A stretch of 64,000 nt of DNA, taken from Phallusia mammillata. Taxonomy: Eukaryota. The notes under the pieces are model-generated. The model ran no database searches. It was not told where the DNA came from and was given only the letters and a program-made list of their open reading frames with translations. Location: assembly GCA_965637545.1 (NCBI GenBank), contig OZ281496.1, forward strand, positions 25,978,001 through 26,042,000, written 5' to 3'. Positions 2,011-26,345 of this stretch are shown here, piece by piece. Every line of letters begins with the position of its first letter. Position 1 is the first letter of the stretch. A program made the position numbers and the translations under genes.

Positions 2011-4886
2011 GAAACTTGGGTCCCAACTCTCCGTTTCAGTGGTCTCCAATTCAGTAGTTTCCAATCTGCAACAACAACAATAAAACTTTATTTCGTAGAA
2101 GATGCAGAAATGCGCATTTAGTGTAACATCATAGAGAAAACAATATTTTTGTGACATACAAAAAAACTAAATATTTAGCACTCCAATGCTTATTTGATTC
2201 ATAAATTGAAGATGTACTAACCTGTGAATGATTGGAATGTTGGTCAGGCTGTCCCCATCTTGACTCTAAGATTTAACTGTTGGATCCATACGGGTCTGCA
2301 AGACAGCATTGGTCGAATTAAGGATCTGAATCAAAAACATAAAAAATAACAATGTTTTTTTAAACAAATCCTCTTAGGCTTGTTAATACTTACATTTAAA
2401 ATGTTCGCATATGAACCGGATTCCTCCACTTCTCTTTGCTGGCTTCGGAACAGGATTGAGAAGCGTAGATGGACAAACATCTGCAACAAAACTTACAGCA
2501 ACATTTGATGTAGTTACTATTGTTATCTTATTATTAAAAGTTCTATTGTTAACATTTTTACCCATACTGTCAAATGAAAGAACACACGTGACATGCACAA
2601 TTTTAAGTGTAACGTGCAAAATTTGATTACTTGCTAAGCTACACCTTAATTATTGGATCTTCACTGAACTTGAGGTCGCAGATTATGCGGTAAACTATTT
2701 AATGATGTTTCCCAAATCCAATAATACAGGTGGCAACGTAAGAAAATGCCAGAAAACCTGAAGCAAAACGACCCAACGTCATGAAATATAAGAACGTATT
2801 GCAGTTAACCGGATGCCTTTTTAGTAAAAAAATCACCTGGAACATTTCGGTTGTGAAGTCGTCTTTGGTAGTCTCTCATCGGCCAAACTTTCCTCGCCAC
2901 GAGTTACTGCAACAAGATTGACATATAACAAACCTGGTACACAAAGGAACTTCAAATATACAATAAAAAATATCCAACATTTATAATAAACGAAAAGACA
3001 AAACTTACAGGCGAGGGCGAATTTGAAGTGTAATTCAAAAAAGAGTGGTCTGGTAAATGGATGCCTCCTTCATCCGGTCCCAAATTTTGTTCCACGAAAA
3101 CAAACCGGTCTAGTTAACGTTTCGTATTTGTTTTTGGCACGTATGTATTAAGGCCCACATTAGACCAGCTAGTTCAAAAATAAACAAGTTACCTGTATCT
3201 TTCCTCTGTATTTATGTTCGGTTGCTTATCATCGCCAACTCTTCGGTCGCCACGAATTACTGAAGAAAGACTTATCCACGTCTTGTTGTGTTTCTGCAAA
3301 ATAGAAAGCAAACGCAGTACCAAGAAACGCAGCACAAAATGCTAAGTTCAGTTTAGTTCTAATAATCAGAAAACGCGTGACATGCAACGTGCCAAACTCC
3401 CATGCAATGTTGGTGTGTTGGAATCCTCACTACATTACAACTTAACAACTGTATATGAGGCCAAGTAATTAGCCGTGTTAAAAAGATAACTTAACTTCAA
3501 TCGGTTTGGTCATAACTTCCATCTTGGCTCAACGCGACTCTTTCCTGAAAGAAAACAAACTAAGGCAGCAACAGAAAACGTAACAAAGTATTTAATTATC
3601 TTCACACATTATACGTTTTAAATAACACAATACAGTGTCTTCACATCGTCGTAACTAAATCTAGGCGATTCATTGTACGGAATGTGCCGTGCCTCTCAGG
3701 TTGTTTACGTACATGTAACATACATAAAAGCTGCTTATGAACCGGATTTCTCCGCTGCTTTACTGTTTTGGGTCAGAAAGTAGCAGTGTGACGGACAATA
3801 ATCTGCAACGAAACTTACGGCAGAATTTGACATGCAAAACCGAATGGTAATTTACTGTTATCCATGATGAAATAATGGTAATTTACTGTTATCCATGCTG
3901 CCAAACGAAAGAACACACGTTACAAGCAAAAAATGAAGTGTAACATGCCAATTAACCATGCAAAATTTAAATATGCCAATTCACCATGCAAAATAATAAT
4001 ACTAGCTATACTACAACTTAACTTAACTATTGTTTCTTTCCCCAATTTCGAATCGACGGCAACGGAGAAGATACCAGTAGTCCTGAAATACGAAAGCAAA
4101 AAGTCCACCAGATCGCACCTAAACTTGTTACTATGAAGACGTTTTACCGTCGACACTTTTAGTTTACCACCACTAAAGGAAACGTGCCTCTCATCGCTCA
4201 AGTCTTCGCCGTGTAAAAAAAAACTGCACTCCAATGGTATTTGAAGTTGTACTAACCTGTGAAAGAGCTGCTTCGCCGTCTTGGCTCGACAATTTAACTG
4301 TTGAAGGATCCTTACGGTCCAGCAAGACAGCACAAATAAGGATCTGAATGAAAAAATACATAACTTATGAAAAAACAGAGTATGAAAAAAACAGTCAATT
4401 TGCTACAAAACGACAATAAAGTTTATCGATTACGACTGTATTCTTACATTTGGGATGATTGTGATGTAGAATATAAACTGAATTCTTTCAGGTTTATTTT
4501 TTCAGTTAATTTTGATGCTTCTCTGGTGCCGGTTTGACGAAGGTCTGAAACAAAACTAAAGTTTATTGAAATGTTACAAGCGTAACATAAACTTACATTC
4601 GATAAGTAATGTTTCATGTGTCGTTTAAAAAAACGACATTGTCCATGGCTTTCCCATTAAGTCGTTTGATGCCTGTCTAATGCTCTGACAAACATCTGCA
4701 ACAAAACTTACAGCAGCATTCGAGTTCACGATAAATATAGTTTCACAAAAGGTTATACTTCAACCGTTGCTGACAACTGAATAGTCAACCAAGCACAAAG
4801 TGACATGCAAAGCCATAAGTGCGACATACCAAACAACATCCGAGAATTGCAGCTACGGGAAAATGCCTACATAGGCACCAAACAAG

Positions 4887-7800
4887 TTCGCCTGTAAACA
4901 AGACAATTACCTGTTTTCTACTTTTTCGCTGCAAGTCATTGTTGACGAATCCTGTCGCTGACTATTCTTTTGAAAGAGTTACTATAAAAACAACAAACGG
5001 AACAATCAGCAAAGAAACATAGCGTAAAACACATTAAAACAAATTCAAACAAAACTCGCTGGCGTAGTAAGACGTGATTTGGGTTTGTAGCTTTGAAATG
5101 GTCTTCTCTCACTGCCAACTCTTTTCACCGGGAGTCACTAAGAAAGGACAACAGAAGAAACTTAACTATTACATAAAAGACCGAGTAGCAAAGGCATAAA
5201 TTGCAACAACTTACAAGCACAAGTGAAAAGATGCCTCGTCAGGATCCATTCTCCAAGAAACCTGTTGCAAAACAAGATTACAGATAAAATGGAGAAATAA
5301 TATCTTTTTCTCACATACATCAAAAAAACTGTACTCCATTGCTTATTTGACTCATACACATTCCGTTGTACTAACCTGTGAAATAACTGTTGGTCAGGGA
5401 TTCACCGTCTTGGCTCCAGGATTCAACTGTTGGCAGAGGATCTCTACGGTCCTGCAAAACAGCACAGGTCGAAGGATCTAAATGACAAAATACATAACAT
5501 AACAATGTTATCAAATATCTGTAACAATTATCCTACATATGCGGCAAGTGTCGTGCCTCTAAAGTTGTTTACTTACATCCAACATGGTCGCCTCTGACCC
5601 AGATTTCCTGCTTTACTGGCTTCGGAACAGCAAGTAGAAGGGCGACGGACAATAATCTGCAAAAAAAATTACAGCCGAATTTGATGTGCAAAACGGAATT
5701 AAGACGAAATTATAGTAATTTACTGTTACCCATGCTGCCAACTGCAAAATCACACGTAAAATGCAAAAATTAAAGTGTAACATGCCAATTCACCATGCAA
5801 AATAGGAATACTAGCTATACTACGACTTAACTTAACTATTATTTATTTATCAAACTTCGAATCGGTGGTAACGTAAGAAGATACCAGGAGACCTGAAATA
5901 TAAAAGCAGTAAGTCAACCAGTTTAAAAGTTTGCCTGTAAACAAGACAATTACCGTTTTTTTCTACATTTTCGTTGCAAGTCATTGTTGCCGAATCCCGT
6001 CGCTGACTATTCTTTTGAAAGAGTTACTATAAAAAAAAATCAGCAAAGAAACATAGCGTAAGACACTTAAAAACAAATTCAAACAAAACTCGCTGGCGTA
6101 GTAAAACGTGATTTGGGTTTGTAGCTTTGAAATGGTCTTCTCTCACTGCCAACTCTTTTCACCGGGAGTCACTAAGAAAGGACAACAGAAGAAACTTAAC
6201 TGTTACACAAAAGACCGAGTAGCAAAGGCATAAATTACAACAACTTACAGACACGGTCCAAATGCGGTTTACAAGTGAAAAGATGCCTCGTCAGGATCCA
6301 TTCTACAAGACACCTGTTACAAAACAAGATTACAGATAAAATGCAGAAACAATATCTTTATCTCACATACACATTGCTTATTTGACTCATACACATTCCG
6401 TTGCACTAACCTGTGAAAGAACTGTTGGTCAGGGATTCACCGTCTTGGCTCCAGGATTCAACTGTTGGCAGAGGATCTCTACGGTCCTGCAAAACAGCAC
6501 AGGTCGAAGGATCTATATGACAAAATACATAAAATAACAATGTTATCAAATATCTGTAACAATTATCCTACATATGCGGCAAAGTGTCGTGCCTCTAAAG
6601 TTGTCTACTTACATCCATCATGGTCGCCTCTGACCCAGATTTCCTGCTTCATTGGCTTCAGCAAGTAGAGGGGTGACGGTCAAACATCTGCAACAAAACA
6701 TCTGCTGCAGAATTTGATGCACTAACCGAATTAAGACAAAATTATGGTGATTTACTGTTATCCATGCTGCCAACTCAAAGAGCACACGTGACATGCAAAA
6801 TATGAAGTGACATGCCAATTCGTCATGCAAAACTAGAATACTAGCTATACTACAACTTAACTTAACTATTGTATCTTTCTCGAACTTCGAATCGGTGGTA
6901 ACGTAAGAATACCAGGAGTCCTGAAATATAAAAGCAGAAAGTCAACCAGTTCGCACCCACATTATGGTGTTCTGTTTTCAACATACAAAATCACCTGGAC
7001 TTTTTGGTTGTAAAGTGATCTTTGGTCGTCTCTCATCACAAGTTACTGCAAAAAGAATAACATTCATCAAACCTTTGGACCCATAAAGAAACACAGCGTA
7101 AGCACACTTCAAAACAAATAAAGCGTCATGGACTTTTGTCATGAATTATTTCAAACAAAACTCACTGGCGTAGTAAGACGTGATTTGGGTTTGCAGTTTT
7201 TAAATGGCCTTCCCTTATCGCCAGATCTTCTTCACTGCGTGTTACTAATAATGGACAACAGAAGAAACTTTACTAATAAACAAAAATACCGAGTGGCAAA
7301 AGCATAAATTTCAAGAACTTACAGGCAAGATCCAAATGTGATTCATAAGTGACAAGATGCGTCGTCAGGATCCATTCTCCAAGACGTCTGTTACAAAACA
7401 AGACTGCACATAAAATGCAGAAACAATATCTTTTCTCACATACAGGCCCTAGGATTTAACTGTTGGATCCCTACGGTCCTGCATGACAGCACAGGTCGAA
7501 GATTCCAAATGAAAAAAAACTACATAAAAAAACAAAGTTAAAAAATATCAACAATAATTATCCTTCGCATACGGCAGAGTTTCGTGCCTCTAAAGTTGTT
7601 TACTTACATCGAACATGGTCGCCTCTGACCAAGATTTCCTGCGACGGACAATAATCTGCAAAAAAAATTACAGCCGAATTTGATGTGCAAACCGGAATTA
7701 AGACGAAATTATAGTAATTTACTGTTACCCATGCTGACAACTGAAAGATCACACGTAAAATGCAAAAATTAAAGTGTAACATGCCAATTCACCATGCAAA

Positions 7801-10800
7801 ATAGGAATACTAGCTATACTACGACTTAACTTAACTATTATTTATTTATCAAACTTCGAATCGGTGGTAACGTAAGAAGATACCAGGAGACCTGAAATAT
7901 AAAAGCAGTAAGTCAACCAGTTTAAAAGTTTGCCTGTAAACAAGACAATTACCGTTTTTTTCTACATTTTCGTTGCAAGTCATTGTTGCCGAATCCCGTC
8001 GCTGACTATTCTTTTGAAAGAGTTACTATAAAAAAAAATCAGCAAAGAAACATAGCGTAAGACACTTAAAAACAAATTCAAACAAAACTCGCTGGCGTAG
8101 TAAAACGTGATTTGGGTTTGTAGCTTTGAAATGGTCTTCTCTCACTGCCAACTCTTTTCACCGGGAGTCACTAAGAAAGGACAACAGAAGAAACTTAACT
8201 GTTACACAAAAGACCGAGTAGCAAAGGCATAAATTACAACAACTTACAGACACGGTCCAAATGCGGTTTACAAGTGAAAAGATGCCTCGTCAGGATCCAT
8301 TCTACAAGACACCTGTTACAAAACAAGATTACAGATAAAATGCAGAAACAATATCTTTATCTCACATACACATTGCTTATTTGACTCATACACATTCCGT
8401 TGCACTAACCTGTGAAAGAACTGTTGGTCAGGGATTCACCGTCTTGGCTCCAGGATTCAACTGTTGGCAGAGGATCTCTACGGTCCTGCAAAACAGCACA
8501 GGTCGAAGGATCTATATGACAAAATACATAAAATAACAATGTTATCAAATATCTGTAACAATTATCCTACATATGCGGCAAAGTGTCGTGCCTCTAAAGT
8601 TGTCTACTTACATCCATCATGGTCGCCTCTGACCCAGATTTCCTGCTTCATTGGCTTCAGCAAGTAGAGGGGTGACGGTCAAACATCTGCAACAAAACAT
8701 CTGCTGCAGAATTTGATGCACTAACCGAATTAAGACAAAATTATGGTGATTTACTGTTATCCATGCTGCCAACTCAAAGAGCACACGTGACATGCAAAAT
8801 ATGAAGTGACATGCCAATTCGTCATGCAAAACTAGAATACTAGCTATACTACAACTTAACTTAACTATTGTATCTTTCTCGAACTTCGAATCGGTGGTAA
8901 CGTAAGAATACCAGGAGTCCTGAAATATAAAAGCAGAAAGTCAACCAGTTCGCACCCACATTATGGTGTTCTGTTTTCAACATACAAAATCACCTGGACT
9001 TTTTGGTTGTAAAGTGATCTTTGGTCGTCTCTCATCACAAGTTACTGCAAAAAGAATAACATTCATCAAACCTTTGGACCCATAAAGAAACACAGCGTAA
9101 GCACACTTCAAAACAAATAAAGCGTCATGGACTTTTGTCATGAATTATTTCAAACAAAACTCACTGGCGTAGTAAGACGTGATTTGGGTTTGCAGTTTTT
9201 AAATGGCCTTCCCTTATCGCCAGATCTTCTTCACTGCGTGTTACTAATAATGGACAACAGAAGAAACTTTACTAATAAACAAAAATACCGAGTGGCAAAA
9301 GCATAAATTTCAAGAACTTACAGGCAAGATCCAAATGTGATTCATAAGTGACAAGATGCGTCGTCAGGATCCATTCTCCAAGACGTCTGTTACAAAACAA
9401 GACTGCACATAAAATGCAGAAACAATATCTTTTCTCACATACAGGCCCTAGGATTTAACTGTTGGATCCCTACGGTCCTGCATGACAGCACAGGTCGAAG
9501 ATTCCAAATGAAAAAAAACTACATAAAAAAACAAAGTTAAAAAATATCAACAATAATTATCCTTCGCATACGGCAGAGTTTCGTGCCTCTAAAGTTGTTT
9601 ACTTACATCGAACATGGTCGCCTCTGACCAAGATTTCCTGCGACGGACAATAATCTGCAAAAAAAATTACAGCCGAATTTGATGTGCAAACCGGAATTAA
9701 GACGAAATTATAGTAATTTACTGTTACCCATGCTGACAACTGAAAGATCACACGTAAAATGCAAAAATTAAAGTGTAACATGCCAATTCACCATGCAAAA
9801 TAGGAATACTAGCTATACTACGACTTAACTTAACTATTATTTATTTATCAAACTTCGAATCGGTGGTAACGTAAGAAGATACCAGGAGACCTGAAATATA
9901 AAAGCAGTAAGTCAACCAGTTTAAAAGTTTGCCTGTAAACAAGACAATTACCGTTTTTTTCTACATTTTCGTTGCAAGTCATTGTTGCCGAATCCCGTCG
10001 CTGACTATTCTTTTGAAAGAGTTACTATAAAAAAAAATCAGCAAAGAAACATAGCGTAAGACACTTAAAAACAAATTCAAACAAAACTCGCTGGCGTAGT
10101 AAAACGTGATTTGGGTTTGTAGCTTTGAAATGGTCTTCTCTCACTGCCAACTCTTTTCACCGGGAGTCACTAAGAAAGGACAACAGAAGAAACTTAACTG
10201 TTACACAAAAGACCGAGTAGCAAAGGCATAAATTACAACAACTTACAGACACGATCCAAATGCGGTTTACAAGTGAAAAGATGCCTCGTCAGGATCCATT
10301 CTCCAAGACACCTGTTACAAAACAAGATTACAGATAAAATGCAGAAACAATATCTTTATCTCACATACACATTGCTTATTTGACTCATACACATTCCGTT
10401 GCACTAACCTGTGAAAGAACTGTTGGTCAGGGATTCACCGTCTTGGCTCCAGGATTCAACTGTTGGCAGAGGATCTCTACGGTCCTGCAAAACAGCACAG
10501 GTCGAAGGATCTATATGACAAAATACATAAAATAACAATGTTATCAAATATCTGTAACAATTATCCTACATATGCGGCAAAGTGTCGTGCCTCTAAAGTT
10601 GTCTACTTACATCCATCATGGTCGCCTCTGACCCAGATTTCCTGCTTCATTGGCTTCAGCAAGTAGAGGGGTGACGGTCAAACATCTGCAACAAAACATC
10701 TGCTGCAGAATTTGATGCACTAACCGAATTAAGACAAAATTATGGTGATTTACTGTTATCCATGCTGCCAACTCAAAGAGCACACGTGACATGTAAAATA

Positions 10801-13800
10801 TGAAGTGACATGCCAATTCGTCATGCAAAACTAGAATACTAGCTATACTACAACTGAACTTAACTTAACTTAACTATTGTATCTTTCTCGAACTTCGAAT
10901 CGGTGGTAACGTAAGAATACCAGGAGTCCTGAAATATAAAAGCAGAAAGTCAACCAGTTCGCACCCACATTATGGTGTTCTGTTTTCAACATACAAAATC
11001 ACCTGGACTTTTTGGTTGTAAAGTGATCTTTGGTCGTCTCTCATCACAAGTTACTGCAAAAAGAATAACATTCATCAAACTTTTGGACCCATAAAGAAAC
11101 ACAGCGTAAGCACACTTCAAAACAAATAAAGCGTCATGAACTTTTGTCATGAATTATTTCAAACAAAACTCACTGGCGTAGTAAGACGTGATTTGGGTTT
11201 GCAGTTTTTAAATGGCCTTCCCTTATCGCCAGCTCTTCTTCACTGCGTGTTACTAATAATGGACAACAGAAGAAACTTTACTAATAAACAAAAATACCGA
11301 GTAGCAAAAGCATAAATTTCAAGAACTTACAGGCAAGATCCAAATGTGATTCATAAGTGACAAGATCCGTCGTCAGGATCCATTCTCCAAGACGTCTGTT
11401 ACAAAACAAGACTGCAGATAAAATGCAGAAACAATATCTTTTCTCACATACAGGCCCTAGGATTTAACTGTTGGATCCCTACGGTCCTGCATGACAGCAC
11501 AGGTCGAAGGATCTAAATGGAAAAAAAAAACTACATAATATAACAAAGTTAACAAATATAAGCAATAATTATCCTTCGCATACGGCAGAGTTTCGTGCCT
11601 CTAAAGTTGTTTACTTACATCGAACATGGTCGCCTCTGACCAAGATTTCTTACTTTACTGGCTTCGGATCAGCAAGTAGAAGGGTGACGGACAATAATCT
11701 GCAAAAAAAATTACAGCCGAATTTGATGTGCAAAACAGAATTAAGACGAAATTATAGTAATTTACTGTTACCCATGCTGCCAACTGTAAAATCACACGTA
11801 AAATGCAAAACAAAGTGTAACATGCCAATTCACCATGCAAAATAATAATACTAGCTATACTACGACTTAACTTAACTATTATTTATTTCTCAAACTTCGA
11901 ATCGGTGGTAACGTAAGAGGATACCAGGAGTCCTGAAATATAAAAGCAGAAAGTCAACCAGTTTAAAAGTTTGCCTGTAAACAAGACAATTACCGTTATT
12001 TCTACATTTTCGTTGCAAGTCATTGTTGCCGAATCCCGTCGCTGACTATTCTTTTGAAAGAGTTACTATAAAAAAACGCAACAACTCTTTTCACCGGGAG
12101 TCACTAAGAAAGGACAACAGAAGAAACTTAACTGTTACACAAAAGACCGAGTAGCAAAGGCATAAATTACAACAACTTACAAGCACAAGTGAAAAGATGC
12201 CTCGTCAAGATCCATTCTCCAAGACACCTGTTACAAAACAAGATTACAGATAAAATGCAGAAACAATATCTTTATCTCACATACACATTGCTTATTTGAT
12301 TCATACACATTCCGTTGCACTAACCTGTGAAATAACTGTTGGTCAGGGATTCACCGTCTTGGCTCCAGGATTCAACTGTTGGCAGAAGGATCTCTACGGT
12401 CCTGCAAAACAGCACAGGTCGAAGGATCTAAATGACAAAATACACAAAATAACAATGTTATCAAATATCTGTAACAATTATCCTACATATGCGGCAAAGT
12501 GTCGTGCCTCTAAAGTTGTTTACTTACATCCAACATGGTCGCCTCTGAGGCTCTGACCCAGATTTCCTGCTTTATTGGCTTCAGCAAGTAGAGGGGTGAC
12601 GGACAAACATTTGGAACAAAACATCTGCTGCAGAATTTGATGCACTAACCGAATTAAGACAAAATTATGGTGATTTACTGTTATCCATGCTGCCAACTGA
12701 AAGAACACACGTGACATGCAAAATATGAAGTGACATGCCAATTCGCCATACAAAACTAGAATACTAGCTATACTACAACTGAACTTAACTTAACTTAACT
12801 ATTGTGTCTTTCCCGAACTTCGAATCGGTGGTAACGTAAGAATACCAGGAGTCCTGAAATATAAAAGCAGAAAGTCAACCAGTTCGCACCCACATTAAGG
12901 TGTTCTGTTTTCAACATACAAAATCACCTGGACTTTTTGGTTGTAAAGTGATCTTTGGTCGTCTCTCATCACAAGTTACTGCAAAAAGAATAACATTCAT
13001 CAAACCTTTGGACCCATAAAGAAACACAGCGTAAGCACACTTCAAAACAAATAAAGCGTCACGAACTTTTGTCATGAATTATTTCAAACAAAACTCACTG
13101 GCGTAGTAAGACGTGATTTGGGTTTGCAGTTTTTAAATGGCCTTCCCTTATCGCCAGCTCTTCTTCACTGCGTGTTACTAATAATGGACAACAGAAGAAA
13201 CTTTACTAATAAACAAAAATACCGAGTAGCAAAAGCATAAATTTCAAGAACTTACAGGCAAGATCCGAATGTGATTCAAAAGTGACAAGATGCGTCGTCA
13301 GGATCCATTCTCCAAGACGTCTGTTACAAAACAAGACTGCAGATAAAATGCAGAAACAATATGTTTTATCACATACAGGCCCTAGGATTTAACTGTTGGA
13401 TCCCTACGGTCCTGCAAGACAGCACAGGTCGAAGGATCTAAATGAAAAAAAACTACATAATATAACAAAGTTAACAAATATAAGCAATAATTATCCTTCG
13501 CATACTGCAGAGTTTCGTGCCTCTAAAGTTGTTTACTTACATCCAACATGGTCGCCTCTGACCTTGATTTCCTGCTTCACTGGCTTCGGAACAGCAAGTA
13601 GAAGGGCGACGGACAATAATCTGCAAAAAAAATTACAGCCGAATTTGATGTGCAAAACGGAATTAAGACGAAATTATAGTAATTTATTGTTACCCATGCT
13701 GCCAACTGTAAAATCACACGTAAAATGCAAAACAAAGTGTAACATGCCAATTCACCATGCAAAATAGGAATACTAGCTATACTACGACTTAACTTAACTA

Positions 13801-15760: not shown

Positions 15761-18700
15761 AGCAACGTAAGAAAATACGAGGAGTTCTGAATTATGAAAA
15801 GTATAAATATCAGCCAGTTTGCATCCACATTTGCGTTTTCCGTTTTCGACAAACAAAATCACCTGGACTTTTTCAGTTGTAAAGTCGTTTTTGGTCGTCT
15901 CTCATCTTCAGAAGTGTGAAGTCGTTATCATCACAAATTGCTGCAACAAGAATGACATTCAGCAAACCCTTGGGCTCACATATAACCTCCACTGCTTTTG
16001 CAGGCTTTGATGCTTCGCTGAAAAGGTCATGAAAAAAGAATGAGACTACAATACATTTACTGTTGTTAATATTCTCAGTTTAAACGCGCTTACTAATATT
16101 TGGAACACACGTGACATGCAAAACACTAAGTGCAGCACGCCAAGTCACCATGCAAACTAAAATGCTTACTATGCAACAACCTTACAATTCGGTATGTCGT
16201 TAAAAATGCATTGCTATAATGCGGTAAACCATTTAAGACACAAAACTTTAAATCAGATTCACTTAACTTTAATCCGAAAAGTCAAAGATATTGCCGATTG
16301 TCTTGAGTACACGATCCATGTCTTGTTGGCTTCCTGTAAAAAGAAAAGCAAAAGCAGTAACAAGAGACTTACCACACAGTACTAAATCTAATTTAACTCT
16401 AATGTTTATGTGTGTACTCACACTCATGGCATCCGCATAGTCGGTGTGACATGCCAAACCTCCATGTAAAAGTGGTATGTGACGTGCAACATGCCAAACC
16501 ACCATGTATAGTTGGAATCCTTAATATAACAACACCTTTTATACTTGCCAATAATATGGCCAAATAATTAGGTCGTGAAAAAAAGCAACTTGACTCCAAT
16601 CGGTTTGGCTAAAAGTTTAATCTTGGTTCAACGCGACCTTTCCTGTAAAAAAACAAATAAAGCAGCAACAAGAAACCAAACGTAGTATTTAATTAAGTTT
16701 ACACTATACGTTTTAAGTAACATGCGCCGATAGGATAAGTGCACGATATGCTATCTTCACATGTTTGTCAATAAAATCTAGGCGTTACATTACAGGCAAT
16801 GAATTTAAATATGTACATGCCTGCAGGATTGTTGTAAAACAGAAAATTCCACGTTTTACGCATTCAACTGTTCAGTCGGCGGTTTAACCATCATTGGAAA
16901 TCCAAACGAAGACTGAAACAAAACAATCCACCATGTATCTACATAGCAACAATGCCATGTGTTTACAAAAGCTACTAAAATCTATTGAACAAATTGTTTT
17001 TCGGTATCGTTGTAGAAGCAAACAAGTGTGTAACTTTGTTTACTCTACATCGACTTTATAAAAGAAAAAATTACCTGCAGATCTCATTCGCCCATCCACC
17101 TCCGACACGAGCAGGAGAAGAATAACAGCCAGCACGCGCTCAAGATATGTCGGTTTCCTCTTTTCTGTTTCGTCCACCAATCAGCACGCTTGCCATTTGG
17201 AACGTCACACGGATGTTTATTACCCGTCCAGTGGAAAGCCTTATTGCAACAACTAGTAAACCTTGAATTGTTTTCTCTGTACAATAAAAATAAAACAGCA
17301 TCAGGACGTAACAATTTGTAACATATTTTACAATTTGCATTATAATACGTTTGAAAATTACAACATGTAAAGACAGGATTAAGTGCACGTTAAACGGCCC
17401 TTCCATGTTGGCATTATTAAAACACGATTTTGTGTAGTTAACAAACACTTGCCTTTAGTTTCAGTTTGACGGAATTCAGCAGAGTCCGCGGTGTTCACGA
17501 GAGAAAATCCTTGGCGTATAAAGGTTTTTTTCTCGCAAGCGGTAAAGGATAACCAGCGTGCAATACGATAAAAGTTATTATTACGAAGTACATGTAAAAA
17601 AGTAAATTACCTATTTCTTAATGAACTTGATGAGGTCTTCTATGCAGCTATGGTTTCTCGTGAGCAGCTCCGGTGCAGAATTTCTAGGAAACAAGTAGAG
17701 TATCAAATATAACATTCAGGTGTGTGATAGGGTATGAAGAAACAGTGGCATATTGTATAAGAAACACAGTTTGAAATATAGTAAACGGAAAACAAAAATG
17801 CAGTTTAGCGAATAAGACTGAGAGGAGGTTAACTTAAATTTGGGAAGGTGTTGTTACTGTTTTACAAAATAATTGGATTCCTTCAGGTTTTGTTTTCGCA
17901 CTTGGTTTAAGCATCAACTTTGTAAAGTTAAATAGAAGCGTAATCTAAACTTACAATGTTTCATGCGTCGTTGAAATAAACTGGATTTTTCAACTGGCTT
18001 TCTGATGCTCCGACAAACATCTGTAACAAAACTGACACCAGCATTCGAGTTGTTTTACAAAGGGTAATATATTTTTCCCGTTGCTGATAACCGAATACTC
18101 CACTAAACACAAGTGACATATAAAACCGCAAGTGCAACACGCCAAGGCAACATGCTAAGAACAACAAGAAGTTTGCCATTCATTGCAGCAACGGGAAAAT
18201 GCCTGCTTAAAATCATAGGTTTGCTTGTAAACAACTAAATTACCTGCGACATTATCGCCGTAAGTTATTGTTGACGTCTCCCATTGCTGACGCCTAAAAA
18301 TACAAATGTACCAATGGGCAATAAACTTACTATAACGACATTTGTTGTCACAAAACAGAATATTCAAATAAAACTTACTGCAAAGTAAGACGTGACATGG
18401 TTTTTCAGCTTTTGTATAGTCGTCCCTCATCGCCAACTCTTCTTCGCTATGTGTTACGTAAGAAAAAACGACAGAATTCATAAATTGAAGTTGTAATAAC
18501 CTGTGAAAGATTGGAATGTTGGTCAGGCTGTCTCCATCCTGGCTCTAAGATTTAACTGCTGGATCCTTACGGGCCTGCAAGACACCATAGGTCAAAGGAT
18601 CTGAATCAAAAACACAAAATAGCAATGTTTTTTTAACAAAACCTCTTAAAATTGTTTATACTTTACTTGCACAACAGGTTTGCACATAAACCGGATTTCT

Positions 18701-21700
18701 CCACTTCTTTTCTGGCTTCAGAACAAAAAGTAGAAGCATAGATTGACAAACATCTGCAACAAAACTTACAGCAACATTTGGTGTACGTAGTTACCATTTA
18801 AAAGTTTTATTACATTTTTACATGCTGCCAACTAAAAGAACACACGTGACATGCAAAATGTGAAGTGTTATTTGCCATATTACCATGCAACATTAGAATA
18901 CTTGCTATACTACAACTTAACTATTGGGTCTTTCCTGAACTTGAGGTCGCGGATTTTGCGGCAAACTATTCGGTGATGTTTCACAAGTTTAATCTTTCAG
19001 GTGGCACCGTAAGAAAATGCCAGAAAACCTGTAAGAAAACGACCCAATATCATGAAATATAAAAAAGTATCAAAGTCAACCTAATGTTTACGTTTCTAGC
19101 AAAAAAAGTGACCTAGGACATTTCGGTTGTGAAGTCATCTTTGGTAGTCTATCATCGCCCAAGCTTTCCTCACAACGAGTTACTGCCACAAGATTGACCT
19201 ATAACAAACCTGGTACAGGAAAAGGAACCAAGCACCACAAACTTCCAATAAATTACCAAGACTTGTAAAAAAACAAATATAACAAAACTTACTGGCGAGG
19301 ACAATTTTGATGTGTAATGCAGAAGAGAGGGAGATAGAGAGAAGTCTGGTAAATAGATGCCTCATCCCGTCCCAATCTATCTGTTCCACCTAAACGAACA
19401 CGTACATCAGCTAACCTTTTGTATTTGTTTTAGCACGTAGCATTCATATTTAAGTTCACTTAAGACCAGCGATTTGTAGACATATTGAACAGAATAGTTA
19501 ACTGCTATTGCACTAACGTTTTGAGGATTTAACTGTTGGTCAAAAATCTCTGTGGTCAGAGCAGGATCAACGCTCCCAAAGGGAAGTATTAGCGACAACA
19601 ATCCCAGGCCTTTTGACTATTGTAATTCCAAGTTTGTTTACTTACATGTAACATCTCCGAATATAAACCAGATTCCTTTGCTGCTTTAGCAGGTTTTCAT
19701 GCTGTGTAGAAACTTTGAAGAAAAGTAGCCTGCAAGACGCACAACAAACCTAATAAGACTAAATTACACTTGGTTTAATATTGTTATCTTCAAAGGTAGT
19801 GCTTACTTACTCAGAACACACGTTAAATACAAAACATGAAGTGCAACATGCCAAACCGCCATGTAAAGCTTAAATTCTCGCTACACTGCAACTTAACGAC
19901 CGATGTGAATCACCAATTGTGCGCCATGCCAATTACCCCACGGAAAACTAAAAAATCAATTGAACTTAACTTTAATCGTTTGAAGACAATATTTTATTCA
20001 TGTCTTGTTGTCTTCCTGTAAAAGAAAGGCAGAAGCAGAACCAGGAAGCGCAAGACACAGTCATAAACCTAGCCACATCTAATCTTTCACCGATGCTGAC
20101 AACTTAGTAGTCGGAACACACGTGACATGCCAAACGCCAAGTGCGACATGCCAAACCAGAATGCAAAACTGAAAACTAAACAATGCTACAGCTTAGTAAC
20201 TATAACTGATCATTAACCTAGCAAATATTAAAAGCATAAATCTCCTATTATGTGACCAACCAATTAGGACATGTAAAATCGAAAAACAAGGTAACTTCAC
20301 TTCAAACGGTTCGGCAATTTCCATCTTGGCTCTTCGTAACTGTTGTTGTCTTCCTGTAAAAACAAAGCAAAAGCAGTGCCAAGAAACACAACACAGGGAT
20401 ATATTTTGTTGACAATATACGTTTCAAGTAACGTGCAAAGATGGAATATGTGCACTTTATACCACCTTTGCATTGTATTGGCTAAATTTAGGCGCTATAT
20501 TACGTCAAATTAATGAAAACATTTACGTGCCTGTTGTTCTCTAGTTCCCATTTCTAAGCATCATTGGATGCACAAAAGTCTAAACTCTAAAAAACAATCC
20601 ATTAGCAGTACCAGGGAACCTAAACAAACTTTGAACGCATTTAACCCCGGAATTTTTCAATAAGTAAACTGGTGTGCACCAACGTTTACTTCTGTATGGA
20701 CACCTATTAATTACTTTATAATAACAGAATTACCTACATAAACCCCAGATGACCATCCACCTTCAACGCGAGCAGCAAAAGCGGAAGGACCGATCGCACA
20801 AGCCCAAAAATGTGATCCAATCTTTGTTTATTTTGCCTTCGGTCAATCACAAGGCTTGTTTTTGACACGTCACATGGAGGTACGGTCAGTAGGTCTTTAT
20901 CACCTCCGCGGGAACTAAAGAAAAGCACACATTAGGTTTGATTTCCTCAAAAAGGTATTACTGAGGTCGGTTCAGCCTATGCTCACAATATAGTGGCCAG
21001 AGCGCACGTGACATGCCCAACATCAGTGCAACATGCCAATTCCGCAAGCAAAACCGAAAACCATACACTACAAGAGGTTGGCAAATAGGTGACAGGACAT
21101 TAAAACCCAAAAAACGAGGTAACTCAACTTCAGTCGATTTGGCTTCAATCTCCATTGTGGCTCTACGCGACTGTTGTTACCTGCGAAAGACAAGGCAATA
21201 GGAAGATAAGATATGTGCACTCTATATTATCATATTTACGTACCTGTTTTCTCGTTGCATGTATCTTTTCACTATTCGCTATAATCCTCAATCGATGCAC
21301 AAAAGTACAAAATGAACCTAAAACAACGCAATACATTTGCATTGTCATGCAGTTAGGGAATCTAAACACATTAAATCCGGTATTATTGCAGAATAAAACT
21401 ATTTTGCACCCAGGTTTGCTTATGCAATTACTTATAGTCAGAACACATGTGACATGCAAAACACGAAGTGCAACATGCCAAATCACCATGCCACTACAAC
21501 TTATTGAAATTTTCCAGCAAAACATTGACGCCATGGATAACTTAACTATCAACTTAACTTTATTCGGTTTAAAGTCAATCTTGGTTCTCCGAGTACTCTC
21601 TGTCTTGTTGCCTTCCTAAAATAGAAAAACAGAAGCAGAACCAAGAAACGCAAAACACAGTAACAAACTGGTTTATATGTTATCTTTGGTTAACATCTAA

Positions 21701-24700
21701 AAATCTAACAGTCGCAACACACGTGAGATGCCAAACGCCAAGTGCAACATGCCAAACCAGAATGCAAAACTGAAAACTAGAATATACTACAGCTTAATAA
21801 CTAGCCTATAACTAATAATTAACCTAACAAATATTAAAAGCATAAACCTCCAATTATGTGACCAACTAATTAGGACATGTAAAATCGAAAAACACAGTAA
21901 CTTAACTTCAATCGGTTTGGCTTCAATTTCCACCTTGACTCTTCGATGTTGTTGTCTTCCAGTAAAAACAAAGCAAAAGCAGTGCCAAGAAACAGAAGAC
22001 AGTGATATATTTCATTGACTATATACGATTTAAGTAACATGCAAAGATGGGATACGTGCACTCTATATACCCCCTTACAGTGTGTTGGCTAAATTTAGGC
22101 GCTATATTACGTCAAATTAATGAAATCATTTACGTGACTGTTGTTCTCTTGTTTTCATTTCTAACCATCATTGGAAGTCTAAAAACCAATCCACTAGCAG
22201 TACCACGCATTTAGGGAACCTAAGCAAACTTTGAACGCTTGCACCAGCGTTTACTTCTGTGTGGATACCAATTAATTTACTTTGTAACAACGATACTACC
22301 TGCATAGACCCCAGATGACCATCCACCTTTAACGCGAGCAGCAAAAGCAGAACGACCGATCGCACAAGCCCAAAACTTCGACCTATCACACGGCTTGTTT
22401 TTTTCGGAAACTAACCAAAAACACACATTTAAGTTCCTAGAGATTTCCTGAAAAAGGTATTACTCGGACGGACGCTATTTTGCACTTATCTGCAAAGTAA
22501 TTAATGTTGGTCAAGTCAAGGATCACTGCAGTCCTGCAAGACAACACAGGTCGACAGCTCTGAAAATACAAAATACAGCACTAAACCTAGTTCATATCTA
22601 ATCGTTTATTCAGGCCTATGCACACACGTGACATGCCCAACATAAGTGCAACATGCCAAGTCCGCATGCGAATATGAAAACTATACAACAGCTTAACAAC
22701 TAGGTGGCCAACTATACAGAACATTAAAACCAAAAAAAAACGAGTTAACTCAACTTCAATCTCCATCTTGGCTCTTAGCGATTGTTGTTGCCTCTAATCC
22801 TCAATCGATGCACAAAACGACAAATAGAACCTAAAACAAAACAATGAATTAGCAGTGCCATGCATTTAGGAAAGCTAAGCAAACTAATAGAACACTTACC
22901 GGTAGTATTGCAGAAAAAAAGTAGTGCGCATACAAGTTTGCTTATACGCTCAGAACACATGTGGCATGCAAAACACAAAGTGCAACATGCCAAATCACCA
23001 TGCCACTACAACATACTGGAATTTCGCGGCAAAACATTGACGCCATCGATAACTTAACTATCAACTTAACTTTGTTCGGTTTAAAGTCAATCTTGGTTCT
23101 TCCAGTACTCTGTCTTGTTGCCTTCCTAAAATAGAAAAAAAGAAGCAGAACCAAGAAACGCAAAACACAGTAACGAACTAACTTATATGCTATCTTGGGT
23201 TTACACCGATCTAAAAATCTAATAGTCGCAACACACGAGACATGCCAAACGCCAAGTGCAACATGCCAAACCAGAATGCAAAACTGAAAACTGAACTATA
23301 CTACAGCTGAACGGTAACTCAACTTTAATCAATTTGGATTTGGTTCCCTTCTACCGTCCCATGGAGCTTTTTTTCTACAATTAGTCAATTCCACTTCGAG
23401 CTGATTGATTAGTTGCTTTAGGCATAAACCTTAGGAAGACTTCGTTCAAGTAAGCTTGCGGGGGCGTGACTCGATTGGCGCTTGTGACACTGCAGTGCTT
23501 GCCGGAAGCTAAAAACGGATTTTACCGTAGAAACGAACCTGTGGTGTTAACACAGACAAAATCCAACAAAAACTAACTAAATTTACCTGCTGCCAGCCGC
23601 TACATGCTGCAAAATGTCGGTGCACATTAATAACCGTTATCCATAAAACACAAATGAAAACACAAAAATAGAGACTCTTTATAACGATGTACTCCAGTAC
23701 AGAAACATTTGTTTTTAACTCGATTTCTGTCTCATACTAAGAAACGTAACATTGCGAACTAAACCTAGTTTACTTGTATTCTGCCTTACACAAACAGCAA
23801 CATACCCCCAATCAGCATGCAGACGATTTTGCCGTTGCCGAAACGTATGTGCGGTTTGTAACCGAAATCTCAACATAGTTCAACACAGTTCAGTTGGTAC
23901 AAGCTAAAATTCGACCAAAGAGTAAATAGCTTACCCCAGAACCTGTACTTTTTTATTGTAGGATATTGACCTTGATTATTTTTTTGATCAAGAAAAGAGG
24001 TATAGCATCGTTTAGTTCCTCTTCTCGGCACAGAAAACGAACACCGAGTTTCCATTTTTCCTGTACGAAAGTAAACACCGGAAGAGCAAAAATATATTGA
24101 AAAATTAAAGCTACTTTATCAGTGCACGCTGCACTGTCTTTTTTGGACCAAGATTGTACTAATTTAATCGGGAACAAAAATCTTATGTTTGACTATTACC
24201 GACAATGATTAAGTTGCAAGAATTACAGACTTTAGTAATCTTTTAGAGCATTTTTTCAAAGCCAAATGAAATTTACCGTCAAATAATTTCCGAAACTTTT
24301 TTTTATGCTATTTTATTTCGGAAATTCGGCAAGCGGTGCACTTCTACCAATGACGACAAGCGAATAGGTACCCAAAACACATGACGTGCAAAGAAGTGCA
24401 ACATGCTCAAGCACCGGGCTAGCTATTCGCATCAACATGGTAGAAATGTTGGTTTAATTCGTTGTTTATGTCACACTGTTTGCATGCCGCCGCTATTAAA
24501 AAGCTTCATAACAAACTTATGGGGCGTTACATTATGCTTTCTTTGTGCGTTGTGGGACAAAGAGACTTTAATGCGGAAATCAATTATGTTTAACCATACA
24601 TTCTAACAAATTACTGGTTTAAAATTAAATTTTCTGACAACTAAATTTACTTACATTGCTGCCTCACGTATCCGTGTCGAAACGTAGGGGTGGTAGGTAA

Positions 24701-25750
24701 CCGAAATCTGAAACAACAAACAACAGTGTGATGTGTAGAAAACTAGGCCGAAAGAACAAAAAATACAAAAATAAATCTAGCAAATGGTCCCACCGCATAT
24801 TTACGTGTATTGCATTTTATTAAAAAGTATTTAGCTCTTGATTAGTCTTTATCAATTGTCCAACCATATATTCTGTAAAATATGCTGGACTAACATGCTG
24901 TATATTTTGTAAGCCATGTAAGGTAAGGTATATTACGTATATTTTTAGGTTTTATACGATAGGCATGTAAGTGATCTTTCCTAAATGCAATTTTCAAAAG
25001 TTAAAAACTCGTCTAAAAATTAGTCACCTGTAACTCGAAGGCCTTGTTTGTTTTTTAACATCTCCTTCCTTCTCGAAAAAAGGACGGTCGCGTTTCCACG
25101 TTTACTGCATGAAAAAAAAAGCAGAGGCAGAAACGTATGGAAAAATAAAAGCTAACTTACTTGTCATGCGCTAAAATATGTCAACATGTGAAGACAGGAT
25201 AAGTTCACGGTAAACTGTCTTCCCAATAGAAATGTGATAATTTTATTGGGCATAGTATACATTACGACAACATCTCAGTCCAACGTTATCCATGTGATTT
25301 ACGTCGCAATAACGTTTAGATAAGTTTGAATAATAACAATATGCTTAAGTCACAAAACATAGGTTATCAATTTGTTTTTGAGCCAATTGAAAATTTGTAG
25401 CGTGACGAGTGACCACATTAGTAAACTCAAATTTATCTATTTGTTTCAAAATTTGCAGCACACTTCTACCAATGCCGACAAACGAATAGTTACCCGAAAC
25501 ACATTTCATGCAAACAATAAAGTGCAACATGCTCACGCACGGGCTAGCTATTCGCAACAACATGATAGAAGTGTTAGCTTTAGTTTGCTGTTTATGTCAC
25601 ACTATGAGTATGTACGGTAAGTTTATCAAGATTTTATTTTAAAATAATTCTTCAAAAGGGCTTTTGTTAAACGGGTTCACTCACATTGCTGCCTTCCATT
25701 ACTGTGTCGAAACTTAGGTGCGCCTTGTGACCAAATTCTGAATCTAAACA
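15760..25750. repeat. Older diverged duplicates of the same repeat family
   Basis: 18480-19330 resembles 2205-3050. 20030-20870 resembles 21620-22390. 21430-21790 resembles 22945-23310. Related blocks occur at 23780, 24650 and 25680. The cacacgtgacatgc motif recurs throughout. Confidence 0.85.
17071..17215 (-). promoter_or_regulatory. Putative promoter and first exon of a non-coding unit
   Basis: CCAAT at 17177-17181, ACGTCAC at ~17202, a CpG-rich stretch ending in minus-strand donor cag|gtaatt at ~17074. Related copies at ~20729-20880 and ~22296-22395. Confidence 0.5.
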
Positions 25751-26055
25751 AAAATAAACACGGCTCAATGCATTTTAACCGCCACATGTTTTAATCATAA
25801 ATGGCAAGTTATCATAGTAAGCCAGGCCTGTTGTTTCTTATTTTCTTGAAATAATGTTTCTTTACCCTGAATTTGAATAGGATAAGGGAATCATATATAA
25901 TTTAAATGAAACAAAAAGATCTATCTTGTATTAAACAAATTTTGAAAACCTAAATGCATTTTAAACATTACACATCGGTTACAATGCAGAATTAAACCTA
26001 TGCACTAAAGTTTATTGCTACACCTACACCAGCAAGTAAGTTTAGAAACAATAGC

Positions 26056-26345
26056 ATTACCCGCACACTCTCCGTTCAGCACAACATCCTTCAGCAAGAA
26101 ACATCAGAAAAGAATGAGCCAACACACGCACACTAGCAAGAAGTGTGACATCCCCTTTTTTCTCTTCGTCCTCATGACCAATCAGAGTCCTTGTTTTAAA
26201 AAACGTCTCAGGGGCGGTCTGAAACCAACCAATGACAAGCGTTATTGCACCAATTAGTGAGTTGCGTTTGGGAAGAGGGTAATTGAATGCTAGAGGCCAA
26301 GCGTTAGAACGCTCATTGGTCAAAGAGGCATCACGTGACACCACT
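26056..26345. promoter_or_regulatory. CCAAT-rich promoter, possibly bidirectional
   Basis: CCAAT at 26178, 26229 and 26250; ATTGG at 26315; GGGGCGG at ~26210; TCACGTGA at 26331; minus-strand donor gg|gtaatg near 26059. Confidence 0.6.

What the first reader, a model, noticed from the sequence alone, without database searches (positions are those of the whole stretch)
2581..25535. About 29 copies of a conserved ~50 nt intronic element: triple GCAUG cluster and minus-strand hairpin
Seen: minus-strand consensus TTGCATGgtgawtTGGCATGTTGCACTT-n-GTTTTGCATGTCACGTGTGTT. Copies lie near 2583, 3374, 3913, 4793, 5751, 6783, 7750, 8782, 9749, 10781, 11793, 12706, 13714, 14645, 15650, 16106, 16444, 18108, 18841, 19816, 20117, 21003, 21444, 21718, 22621, 22955, 23232, 24378 and 25500, and survive where the flanks barely align. 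UGGCAUGU pairs with GCAUGUCA using G-U pairs that work only on the minus strand, and variants at 16106, 18108, 20117 and 22955 keep the stem. Established: (U)GCAUG is the RBFOX motif; GCACG, GCUUG and GUAUG, seen at ~2610, 3388, 3920, 4823, 21045 and 24385, are secondary RBFOX motifs. Hypotheses: an RBFOX-regulated or RBFOX-sequestering RNA array, a structured small-RNA cassette, or a DNA element (CACGTG E-box plus weak p53-like CATG half-sites). Evidence is mixed because some variants break the stem and others break the motif.
Basis: partly seen in the sequence, partly recalled or inferred. Interest (0 to 1): 0.8.

Follow-up and report, generated by a model that had tools for sequence, protein, structure and literature searches.

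The report
Repeated triple-GCAUG intron module array
A sea-squirt chromosome carries a family of apparently non-coding genes built from repeated mini-introns, each keeping the same ~55-base sequence with three GCAUG sites. It most likely binds Rbfox-type splicing proteins, but neither binding nor splicing has been shown.

Summary
All 29 copies are present, all lie on the minus strand, and they are far more frequent than chance.

The scan met this element before, in two other arrays 1.7 and 2.3 Mb further along the same chromosome (s1-375444, s1-410980). A census now gives at least 218 copies in at least 12 arrays on contig C3 (25.98–30.43 Mb). A further set sits inside a dispersed 5.6-kb repeat on C5.

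- **Conservation:** between loci the 60-nt core stays 70% identical, while the flanks fall to 49–54%, which is the random level.
it shows no covariation. It is a by-product of the self-complementary CAUG.
- **Setting:** the module sits in a fixed frame. AAGTTAAGT lies 20–100 nt upstream and TTTTGTTRCAG about 95 nt downstream, so it looks like a short intron.
- **Gene family:** the arrays are paralogous genes. They share a conserved CCAAT/E-box promoter and a first exon, and conservation stops at a 5' splice site.
- **Foldback:** in two unit subtypes, about a sixth of the non-redundant copies, the flanks form a long foldback with the module at its tip.
- **Trans factor:** the genome encodes an Rbfox RRM.

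Best reading (about 0.45): a multipart Rbfox-type RNA platform, made of GCAUG sites plus a GU-rich tail. A DNA-level binding site and a stable intronic RNA are not excluded. Public reads did not show splicing.

The parts
2500..25600 (-). Tandem array of 29 units of 0.27-1.7 kb. It includes a near-identical 1,999-bp higher-order repeat at about 5,700-11,800.
   Evidence: Splice-like words are strongly biased to the minus strand: GTAAGT 37 vs 5, and pyrimidine tract plus AG 41 vs 1.
2579..2631 (-). Element copy 1, the 3'-most in the sense direction. Its first GCAUG block is degraded.
3369..3408 (-). Element copy 2, lacking the spacer and one block (weak match).
3910..4000 (-). Element copy 3, with a 28-nt partial duplication of blocks 1-2.
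4798..4847 (-). Element copy 4, an S2-type unit. The foldback spans 4,760-4,862.
5747..15708 (-). Eleven M-type element copies: 5747-5809, 6779-6839, 7746-7808, 8778-8838, 9745-9807, 10777-10837, 11789-11849, 12702-12762, 13711-13771, 14641-14701 and 15646-15708.
16103..16162 (-). Element copy 16.
16444..16518 (-). Element copy 17, a rearranged or partial double copy.
18074..18198 (-). S2-type foldback enclosing element copy 18 (18,105-18,163). The arm CCCGTTGCTG pairs with CAGCAACGGG.
18837..23290 (-). Nine diverged element copies: 18837-18899, 19812-19875, 20113-20175, 20999-21060, 21439-21496, 21715-21776, 22622-22680, 22951-23012 and 23229-23290.
24337..24450 (-). S1-type foldback enclosing element copy 28 (24,373-24,426). 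A 155-nt contig of run X3 matches 24,332-24,486 exactly.
25459..25575 (-). S1-type foldback enclosing element copy 29 (25,496-25,550). This is the first unit of the array in the sense direction.
24655..24707 (-). Predicted exon, a paralogue of exon 2, followed by GTAAGT. It lies upstream of the second S1 unit.
   Evidence: Read from the sequence; prediction only.
25685..25743 (-). Predicted exon 2, followed by GTGAGT. It is conserved at 73-79% in other arrays.
26047..26401 (-). Conserved promoter-like region and first exon. It holds GTCACGTGAT, four CCAAT/ATTGG boxes and a GC box. The exon ends at 26,061, followed by GTAATG.
   Evidence: 76-85% identical to the 5' ends of three other arrays. 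Conservation collapses right after the 5' splice site.

Best explanation
The element is a multipart RNA-level protein-binding platform inside a repeated short intron. Read on the minus strand it has three blocks:
- UUGCAUGgUG
- UUGGCAUGUUGCACUU
- UUUUGCAUGUCACgUGUGUU

That gives three Rbfox-type (U/G)GCAUG sites, plus further conserved bases and a GU-rich tail.

Each copy lies between a conserved, atypical 5' splice-site-like word (AA|GUUAAGU) and a strong 3' splice site (UUUUGUUGCAG|). In S1 and S2 units the 5' site is instead a canonical GUAAGU or GUAAUU. The copies belong to a lineage-specific family of apparently non-coding, multi-exon genes. Each gene is driven by a conserved CCAAT/E-box promoter.

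Inferred mechanism: Rbfox, probably with GU-binding partners, binds the module on the nascent RNA. This either promotes use of the weak upstream 5' splice site or mini-exon, or makes the transcripts or their introns a high-capacity sink for Rbfox. One array offers about 80 GCAUG sites and the sampled arrays several hundred.

What is shown:
- the sequence conservation;
- the strand bias;
- the fixed position relative to splice-like signals;
- the gene-family architecture;
- the presence of an Rbfox gene.

What is inferred:
- transcription of the arrays;
- splicing at the predicted sites;
- Rbfox binding;
- any effect of that binding.
For: - **Conservation:** three blocks are conserved in 104 non-redundant copies (<90% identical). 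GCAUG positions carry 1.1-1.8 bits, and the base before each GCAUG about 1.0 bit. The core is 70% identical between loci, the flanks 49-54%.
- **Site retention:** every detected copy keeps at least one intact GCAUG: 17 keep one, 61 keep two and 26 keep three.
- **Strand bias:** GCATG counts on the element strand versus the opposite strand are 87 vs 10 in the window and 598 vs 138 in the other arrays.
- **Fixed frame:** 116 of 136 AAGTTAAGT sites are followed by an element, against 0.20 expected by chance. 81 of 94 TTTTGTTRCAG sites are preceded by one. A 3' splice-site-like signal peaks 80-120 nt downstream.
- **Splice words:** they are biased to the sense strand.
- **Promoter and first exon:** both are conserved between arrays, and conservation ends exactly at CAG|GTAATG. 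This argues that transcription and splicing in this direction matter.
- **GU-rich tail:** GUGUGUU begins 6 nt after the third GCAUG. GU-rich hnRNP M motifs within 1-10 nt of GCAUG are described for Rbfox1/LASR modules, and a GCAUG-GU module is described in C. elegans (PMC11874969).
- **Trans factor:** an exon on C2 encodes [22 protein letters not shown]. Its only matches among solved structures are Rbfox and ASD-1 RRMs, with E-values down to 1e-11.
Against: - No RNA evidence for splicing. Four RNA-guessed runs hold almost nothing of the array, show no real splice joints and have nothing on exon 1.
- Conservation outside the GCAUG cores (UUGCACUU, UCACGUG) is as strong as inside them. Rbfox alone does not explain this.
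- The middle site is GGCAUG, not UGCAUG.
- Secondary Rbfox motifs are not clearly enriched among variants (26 of 61).
- The proposed 5' site GUUAAGU is atypical, with U at +3. A canonical 5' splice-site matrix finds a strong site upstream in only 26 of 98 copies.
- The promoter carries the same TGTCACGTG word as block 3, which fits a DNA-level reading.
- The X3 contigs centred on the element could come from a DNA library such as an open-chromatin library. The library type is unknown.
Confidence: 0.45

Rival explanations
1. DNA-level cis-regulatory module. The element would be a composite transcription-factor site, made of a TCACGTG E-box for a USF/TFE/MITF-type bHLH-ZIP factor, CATG half-sites and TTGGCA. 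It would be repeated through the arrays as an enhancer or chromatin element.
For: - GTCACGTG is conserved, and the same TGTCACGTG word sits in the conserved promoter of the arrays.
- The variants CATGTG and CACATG are still E-box or M-box-like.
- In run X3, of unknown library type, the only contigs on the 6-kb stretch are pieces of about 155 nt centred on elements. Nothing lies on the promoter or exon 1. This would fit open chromatin as well as RNA.
Against: - The central CpG guanine is the least conserved base of block 3 (74 of 104). The whole S2 subtype carries CACTTG.
- Conservation around CACGTG is asymmetric: T, not A, follows it.
- The G before each CATG is conserved, but its mirror position is not.
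- All 218 copies share the orientation of the splice signals and promoter. The element keeps a fixed distance to a 3' splice-site signal.
Confidence: 0.2
2. Stable intron-derived RNA. The intron, or a piece of about 120-150 nt around the module, would be the product, as with snoRNA or miRNA host genes. The S1/S2 foldbacks would protect or process it, and the conserved blocks would be its functional core.
For: - Promoter, splice signals and intron core are conserved while the exons are not. This is the pattern of small-RNA host genes.
- S1 and S2 units fold into a long hairpin with the module at the tip. For S1 the consensus fold is -23.4 kcal/mol, 95.4% of cells pair, and 3 pairs change on both sides against 0.6 in shuffles (3 of 500 shuffles reach this). 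One-sided changes mostly give G-U pairs.
- 155-nt contigs centred on the element occur at two loci in run X3.
Against: - Rfam gives no match at gathering thresholds.
- The core has no conserved structure.
- About three quarters of the copies show no excess folding. Mean z is -0.39, against -0.21 for control windows, and subtypes M, S3 and S4 are near 0.
- The S1 foldback folds about equally well on both strands (z -2.75 and -2.63), as any inverted repeat would.
- No C/D or H/ACA boxes were noticed by eye, and the arm-loop-arm conservation of a miRNA is absent.
Confidence: 0.15
3. No host function. The element would be the best-kept part of a selfish or recently homogenised repeat, such as a foldback or MITE-like element or a satellite, spread by duplication and gene conversion.
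For: - Flanking inverted repeats occur in S1 and S2 units.
- At least 15 near-identical copies lie on C5 inside a 5.6-kb dispersed repeat without long ORFs.
- Part of the window array is a very young higher-order repeat.
Against: - Flanks between loci are at random identity while the core is at 70%. This needs selection on the core, not recent spread.
- The element is retained in about 85% of independently anchored introns.
- In the C5 repeat the element is internal, more than 2 kb from either edge, not at a terminus.
- The arrays keep an ordered architecture, with promoter first, then S1 units, then the other types.
Confidence: 0.1

Closest known systems
Rbfox/LASR multipart intronic splicing modules (GCAUG plus adjacent GU-rich hnRNP M motifs; Peyda et al. 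2025, PMC11874969) and the C. elegans ASD-1/FOX-1 + SUP-12 element UGCAUGGUGUGC
   Same: Tandem GCAUG sites sit on the transcribed strand, inside a predicted intron near exons. A GU-rich run follows within 10 nt. Block 1 begins UGCAUGGUG, like the worm element.
   Different: Here the module has a fixed ~55-nt arrangement copied more than 200 times in non-coding arrays. The known modules are single, loosely organised clusters next to protein-coding alternative exons. Additional invariant bases (UUGCACUU, UCACG) have no known reader. Binding is untested.
Rbfox-sequestering sno-lncRNAs of the human 15q11-q13 (Prader-Willi) region and other repeated non-coding host-gene arrays (SNORD116, C19MC). 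This comparison rests on my own knowledge, not on a paper read here.
   Same: These are also tandemly repeated non-coding exon-intron units in one chromosomal domain, with conserved intron content and unconserved exons. Many UGCAUG sites could titrate Rbfox.
   Different: No snoRNA or miRNA was found in these introns. Accumulation of the RNA is unknown. The system is tunicate-specific and unrelated in sequence.
Downstream intronic enhancers of micro-exons with weak splice sites
   Same: A tiny predicted exon or weak 5' splice-site-like word is followed within 20-100 nt by a strongly conserved GCAUG cluster.
   Different: The exons here appear non-coding, and the 5' site (GUUAAGU) is non-canonical and unverified.

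Membership tests
Rbfox-type intronic splicing regulatory module | (U)GCAUG on the transcribed strand, conserved above background | tested here: met
   There are three sites per element. GCAUG positions carry 1.1-1.8 bits in 104 non-redundant copies. Sense versus antisense GCATG counts are 87 vs 10 and 598 vs 138. Core identity is 70% against 49-54% for the flanks.
Rbfox-type intronic splicing regulatory module | Located in an intron within a few hundred nt of a regulated exon | tested here: inconclusive
   Splice-like signals flank the element at fixed distances. No splice junction was seen in public reads. The upstream 5' site is atypical.
Rbfox-type intronic splicing regulatory module | Cofactor motifs (GU-rich) adjacent to GCAUG | tested here: met
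   GUGUGUU starts 6 nt after the third GCAUG and is conserved at 1.3-1.6 bits. The criterion comes from PMC11874969.
Rbfox-type intronic splicing regulatory module | Organism encodes an Rbfox protein | tested here: met
   An exon at C2:585496-585525 (-) translates to [22 protein letters not shown]. Its only PDB matches are Rbfox1, Rbfox2 and ASD-1 RRMs, with E-values down to 1e-11. The Fox-1_C Pfam domain was not found, but that search was uninformative.
Rbfox-type intronic splicing regulatory module | Direct binding and Rbfox-dependent splicing change | not testable with these tools
   This needs CLIP, EMSA and minigene or knock-down experiments.
Structured small RNA (miRNA, snoRNA or other Rfam family) | Match to a curated family | tested here: not met
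   No Rfam match at gathering thresholds in the 64-kb window.
Structured small RNA (miRNA, snoRNA or other Rfam family) | Conserved secondary structure with covariation | tested here: not met
The alifold energy is -1.95 kcal/mol. Family-wide folding z-scores match controls. Only the S1 and S2 subtypes have an enclosing foldback, with weak covariation.
Transposon terminus / MITE | Element at the end of a dispersed mobile unit | tested here: not met
   Copies lie in ordered tandem arrays with one orientation per array. In the dispersed C5 repeat the element is internal. No transposase-like ORF is present.
E-box / bHLH-ZIP DNA site cluster | Invariant CACGTG core, symmetric flanks | tested here: inconclusive
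   CACGTG is present in 74 of 104 copies. The central G is the weakest base of the block and the flanks are asymmetric. CpG decay could explain part of this.

The most novel reading that the evidence does not exclude
A 4.5-Mb domain of one sea-squirt chromosome holds a dozen or more paralogous non-coding genes whose selected product is the intron rather than the exons. More than 200 copies of a fixed Rbfox-plus-cofactor platform would together act as a tissue-specific sink or scaffold for Rbfox. A subset of these copies is presented on long foldbacks. This would be an independent tunicate invention, analogous to the Rbfox-sequestering sno-lncRNAs of the human Prader-Willi region.
Probability: 0.15. 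Interest if true: 0.8.

Novelty: new variant of a known kind. Interest (0 to 1): 0.5.

Why it matters
If the reading is right, this is one of the densest natural concentrations of Rbfox-type sites known. It is organised as a gene family with its own conserved promoter, in an invertebrate chordate that can be electroporated and imaged. That would make two questions directly testable:
- how multi-site Rbfox modules and their cofactor motifs work;
- whether non-coding RNAs are used to buffer a splicing regulator outside mammals.

If the DNA-level reading is right instead, the arrays are an unusual repeated enhancer or chromatin element. Either way, the conserved intron with unconserved exons shows that the sequence is under selection.

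Tried and rejected
tested and rejected. Any two GCAUGU words pair because CAUG is self-complementary.
- **Known RNA family:** Rfam at gathering thresholds gave none.
- **Coding potential:** the exon-like pieces carry stops and indels and are not conserved. They were taken as non-coding.
- **Family-wide hidden structure:** folding z-scores of 190-nt windows equal those of control windows. Two earlier runs of this test timed out.
- **Flank-to-flank duplex energies:** only 17 of 98 copies had z < -2.
- **Public RNA runs:** the run search found no confirmed RNA holder. Laying four RNA-guessed runs on 20,301-26,300 gave only four short contigs, and the only joint is a mapping artefact: a contig of a paralogous copy (L013) aligned across two element copies. 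Splicing could therefore not be tested.
- **Fox-1_C Pfam search of the genome:** it gave nothing even in the control genomes, so it was uninformative.
- **Literature:** no paper holds both Phallusia mammillata and GCATG.
- **3' minisatellite:** no comparable minisatellite was found at the 3' ends of two other arrays.
- **Secondary Rbfox motifs:** no clear enrichment among variants.
Full report
**What is there**

The window is G000:C3:25,978,001-26,042,000 of a sea-squirt assembly. Earlier notes of the scan name the species as Phallusia mammillata. I did not test that.

Positions 2,500-25,600 are a tandem array of units of 0.27-1.7 kb. The array includes a near-identical 1,999-bp higher-order repeat at about 5.7-11.8 kb. 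The central 16-mer, with up to 3 mismatches, occurs 23 times against 1.4 expected. GCATG occurs 87 times on the minus strand and 10 on the plus strand in the array.

**Is it more conserved than its surroundings?**

Yes.

- Among 17 non-redundant units of the window, the element columns are 70-90% conserved and most flank columns 20-50%.
- I built a sequence-only covariance model from 23 copies and searched the whole assembly. All 150 scored candidates matched.
- After I fetched 31 loci, the model found 241 matches and nhmmer found 218. Each locus had matches on one strand only.
- In 104 copies less than 90% identical to each other, conservation falls into three blocks: UUGCAUGgUG, UUGGCAUGUUGCACUU and UUUUGCAUGUCACgUGUGUU. 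A variable spacer of about 4 nt separates blocks 2 and 3.
- Between copies from different loci, the 60-nt core is 70% identical. The four neighbouring 60-nt bins are 49-54% identical, which is what shuffled sequence gives.
- Finding copies through the core biases this figure, so I used independent anchors. 116 of 136 sense-strand AAGTTAAGT words in the arrays are followed by an element within 20-230 nt, where chance gives 0.20. 81 of 94 TTTTGTTRCAG words are preceded by one within 40-200 nt.

The stem UGGCAUGU/GCAUGUCA pairs in 89.7% of cells, but shuffling the partners among sequences gives 89.8%. No pair changes on both sides. RNAalifold gives -1.95 kcal/mol for the core. The pairing follows from the self-complementary CAUG inside two copies of the same motif. 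Rfam has no match in the window at gathering thresholds.

**A wider context that earlier work on this element had not described**

*1. The copies form at least 12 arrays on C3 between 25.98 and 30.43 Mb.* Each array lies on one strand.

*2. The arrays are paralogous genes.*
- Window 26,047-26,401 (minus strand) is 76-85% identical to the 5' ends of three other arrays.
- It holds a GTCACGTGAT E-box, four CCAAT/ATTGG boxes, a GC box and a first exon.
- Conservation stops exactly after CAG|GTAATG.
- A second predicted exon (25,685-25,743) is also shared.

*3. Unit subtypes keep an order.* A subtype I call S1 is always first after the promoter, at the start of seven arrays.

*4. Splice-like words are strongly biased to the element strand.*
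- In the window, GTAAGT is 37 vs 5 and pyrimidine tract plus AG is 41 vs 1.
- In the other arrays, GTAAGT is 269 vs 61.

*5. The element sits in a fixed frame.*
- The word RAA|GTTAAGT lies 20-100 nt upstream in 65 of 98 copies. It is found anywhere on the antisense strand in only 2.
- A strong 3' splice-site signal peaks 80-120 nt downstream.
- In S1 and S2 units the upstream site is a canonical GTAAGT, GTGAGT or GTAATT.

The exon-like pieces carry stops and indels and are poorly conserved between diverged units. The picture is a short intron conserved as a unit, inside non-coding genes.

**A real foldback, but only in some units**

In S1 units (11 distinct) and S2 units (about 20), the flanks are inverted repeats. 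They enclose the module in a hairpin of about 115-125 nt.

- For S1 the consensus fold is -23.4 kcal/mol, with 95.4% of cells paired. Three pairs change on both sides, against 0.6 in shuffles (3 of 500 shuffles reach this). One-sided changes mostly give G-U pairs.
- Folding z-scores are -2.75 for S1 and -1.45 for S2. They are about 0 for the M, S3, S4 and unclassified units. For the whole family the mean is -0.39, against -0.21 for control windows 330 nt away.
- S1 folds about equally well on both strands (z -2.75 sense, -2.63 antisense), as any inverted repeat would.

The foldback is therefore a subtype feature, not the reason for the family-wide conservation.

**Expression**

The run search found two likely DNA holders and only RNA-guessed runs with next to none of the words. 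I laid four of them on 20,301-26,300 (6,000 letters, within the operators' limit). This gave four short contigs and no real splice joint. Nothing lay on the promoter or exon 1.

- Two 155-nt contigs of run X3 are centred on elements. One matches window 24,332-24,486 exactly and covers the second S1 foldback.
- The other comes from array F (L013 about 5,417-5,571), wholly inside a predicted intron.
- The one joint listed for X3 (22,654 to 23,261) is this L013 contig aligned across two element copies of the window. It is a mapping artefact, not a splice.
- The library type of X3 is unknown. These contigs could therefore be intron RNA or open-chromatin DNA, and I give them little weight.
- A 428-nt contig of run X8 belongs to the C5 repeat.

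**Mechanism**

The best-supported reading is an RNA-level platform for Rbfox with partners.

- The GCAUG cores are among the most conserved bases, and the preceding base is less conserved. From my own knowledge of the Rbfox RRM-RNA structure, the first U contributes less to binding, so this fits.
- Every detected copy keeps at least one intact site, and most keep two.
- The GU-rich tail lies within the 1-10 nt window in which GU-rich hnRNP M motifs accompany protected GCAUGs in Rbfox1/LASR complexes. Block 1 starts like the worm UGCAUGGUGUGC element (PMC11874969).
- The genome encodes an Rbfox RRM exon.

Placed downstream of a weak 5' splice site, the module would act as an intronic enhancer. 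Repeated hundreds of times in nuclear transcripts, it could also titrate Rbfox.

Several points count against a simple Rbfox story:
- UUGCACUU and UCACGUG are as conserved as the cores.
- The middle site is GGCAUG.
- Known secondary Rbfox motifs make up only 26 of 61 single-base variants.
- The putative 5' site GUUAAGU is non-canonical.
- No RNA evidence exists.

**Rivals**

*DNA-level site cluster (0.2).* The promoter shares the TGTCACGTG word, and the X3 contigs may be DNA. Against it, the central CpG guanine is the weakest base of its block, the S2 subtype has CACTTG, and the conservation is asymmetric.

*Stable intron-derived RNA (0.15).* This fits the host-gene-like pattern and the S1/S2 foldbacks. 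Against it, most copies have no conserved structure.

*Selfish or neutral repeat (0.1).* This is contradicted by flanks at random identity, about 85% retention in independently anchored introns, and the ordered array architecture. In the C5 dispersed repeat (at least 5.6 kb, 95-97% identical, no long ORF) the element is internal, not terminal.

**Comparison and novelty**

The motif grammar matches described Rbfox/LASR modules. The repeated non-coding host-gene layout recalls mammalian imprinted snoRNA and miRNA arrays and the Rbfox-binding sno-lncRNAs; that comparison rests on my own knowledge.

What differs is a fixed 55-nt arrangement copied more than 200 times, a dedicated conserved promoter, and the foldback presentation in two subtypes.

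The scan had already met the element in two other arrays of this chromosome and read it the same way (s1-375444, s1-410980, s1-375403). My tests on independent copies agree on both points: the module is conserved, and it is not a hairpin. They add the census, the gene-family architecture, the anchor tests, the subtype foldback and the Rbfox gene.

I rate it a new variant of a known kind, with interest 0.5.

Noticed in passing
window 167-1877: A 1.7-kb minisatellite with periods of 20, 41 and 50 nt lies at the 3' end of the array. On the minus strand its unit reads TGCGTGTTTGTCTATGTTGT, which is GU-rich and holds GCGUG and GCUUG words. Two other arrays have no such repeat at their 3' ends.
   Followed up: partly
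L025-L030 (C5:24.9-27.2 Mb and C70); e.g. L026:1036-6678: At least 15 dispersed copies of a repeat of at least 5.6 kb, 95-97% identical, without long ORFs. Each carries a 63-nt piece of the array promoter and one S2-type unit, like a one-unit mini-gene. A 428-nt contig of run X8 matches it.
   Followed up: partly
L032 (C2:585496-585525, minus strand): An exon encodes the start of an Rbfox-type RRM ([22 protein letters not shown]) and ends at a GT. The rest of the gene was not traced.
   Followed up: partly
window 33249-63050, minus strand: Several thrombospondin type-1 repeat ORFs (CSxxCGGG, WxxW) lie on the same strand, upstream of the array. The array lies 3' of this gene cluster but has its own conserved promoter.
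   Followed up: no
window 41499-42317, plus strand: A 272-aa ORF that looks like a fragment of a mobile element, with an endonuclease-like C-terminal part. It was not searched against any library.
   Followed up: no
arrays in general; e.g. window 6858-6866 and L013:5631-5639: The word RAAGTTAAGT recurs upstream of most elements. It could be a 5' splice site that pairs with U1 through a bulged U (GU-U-AAGU). If used, it would be an unusual, family-wide non-canonical donor.
   Followed up: partly
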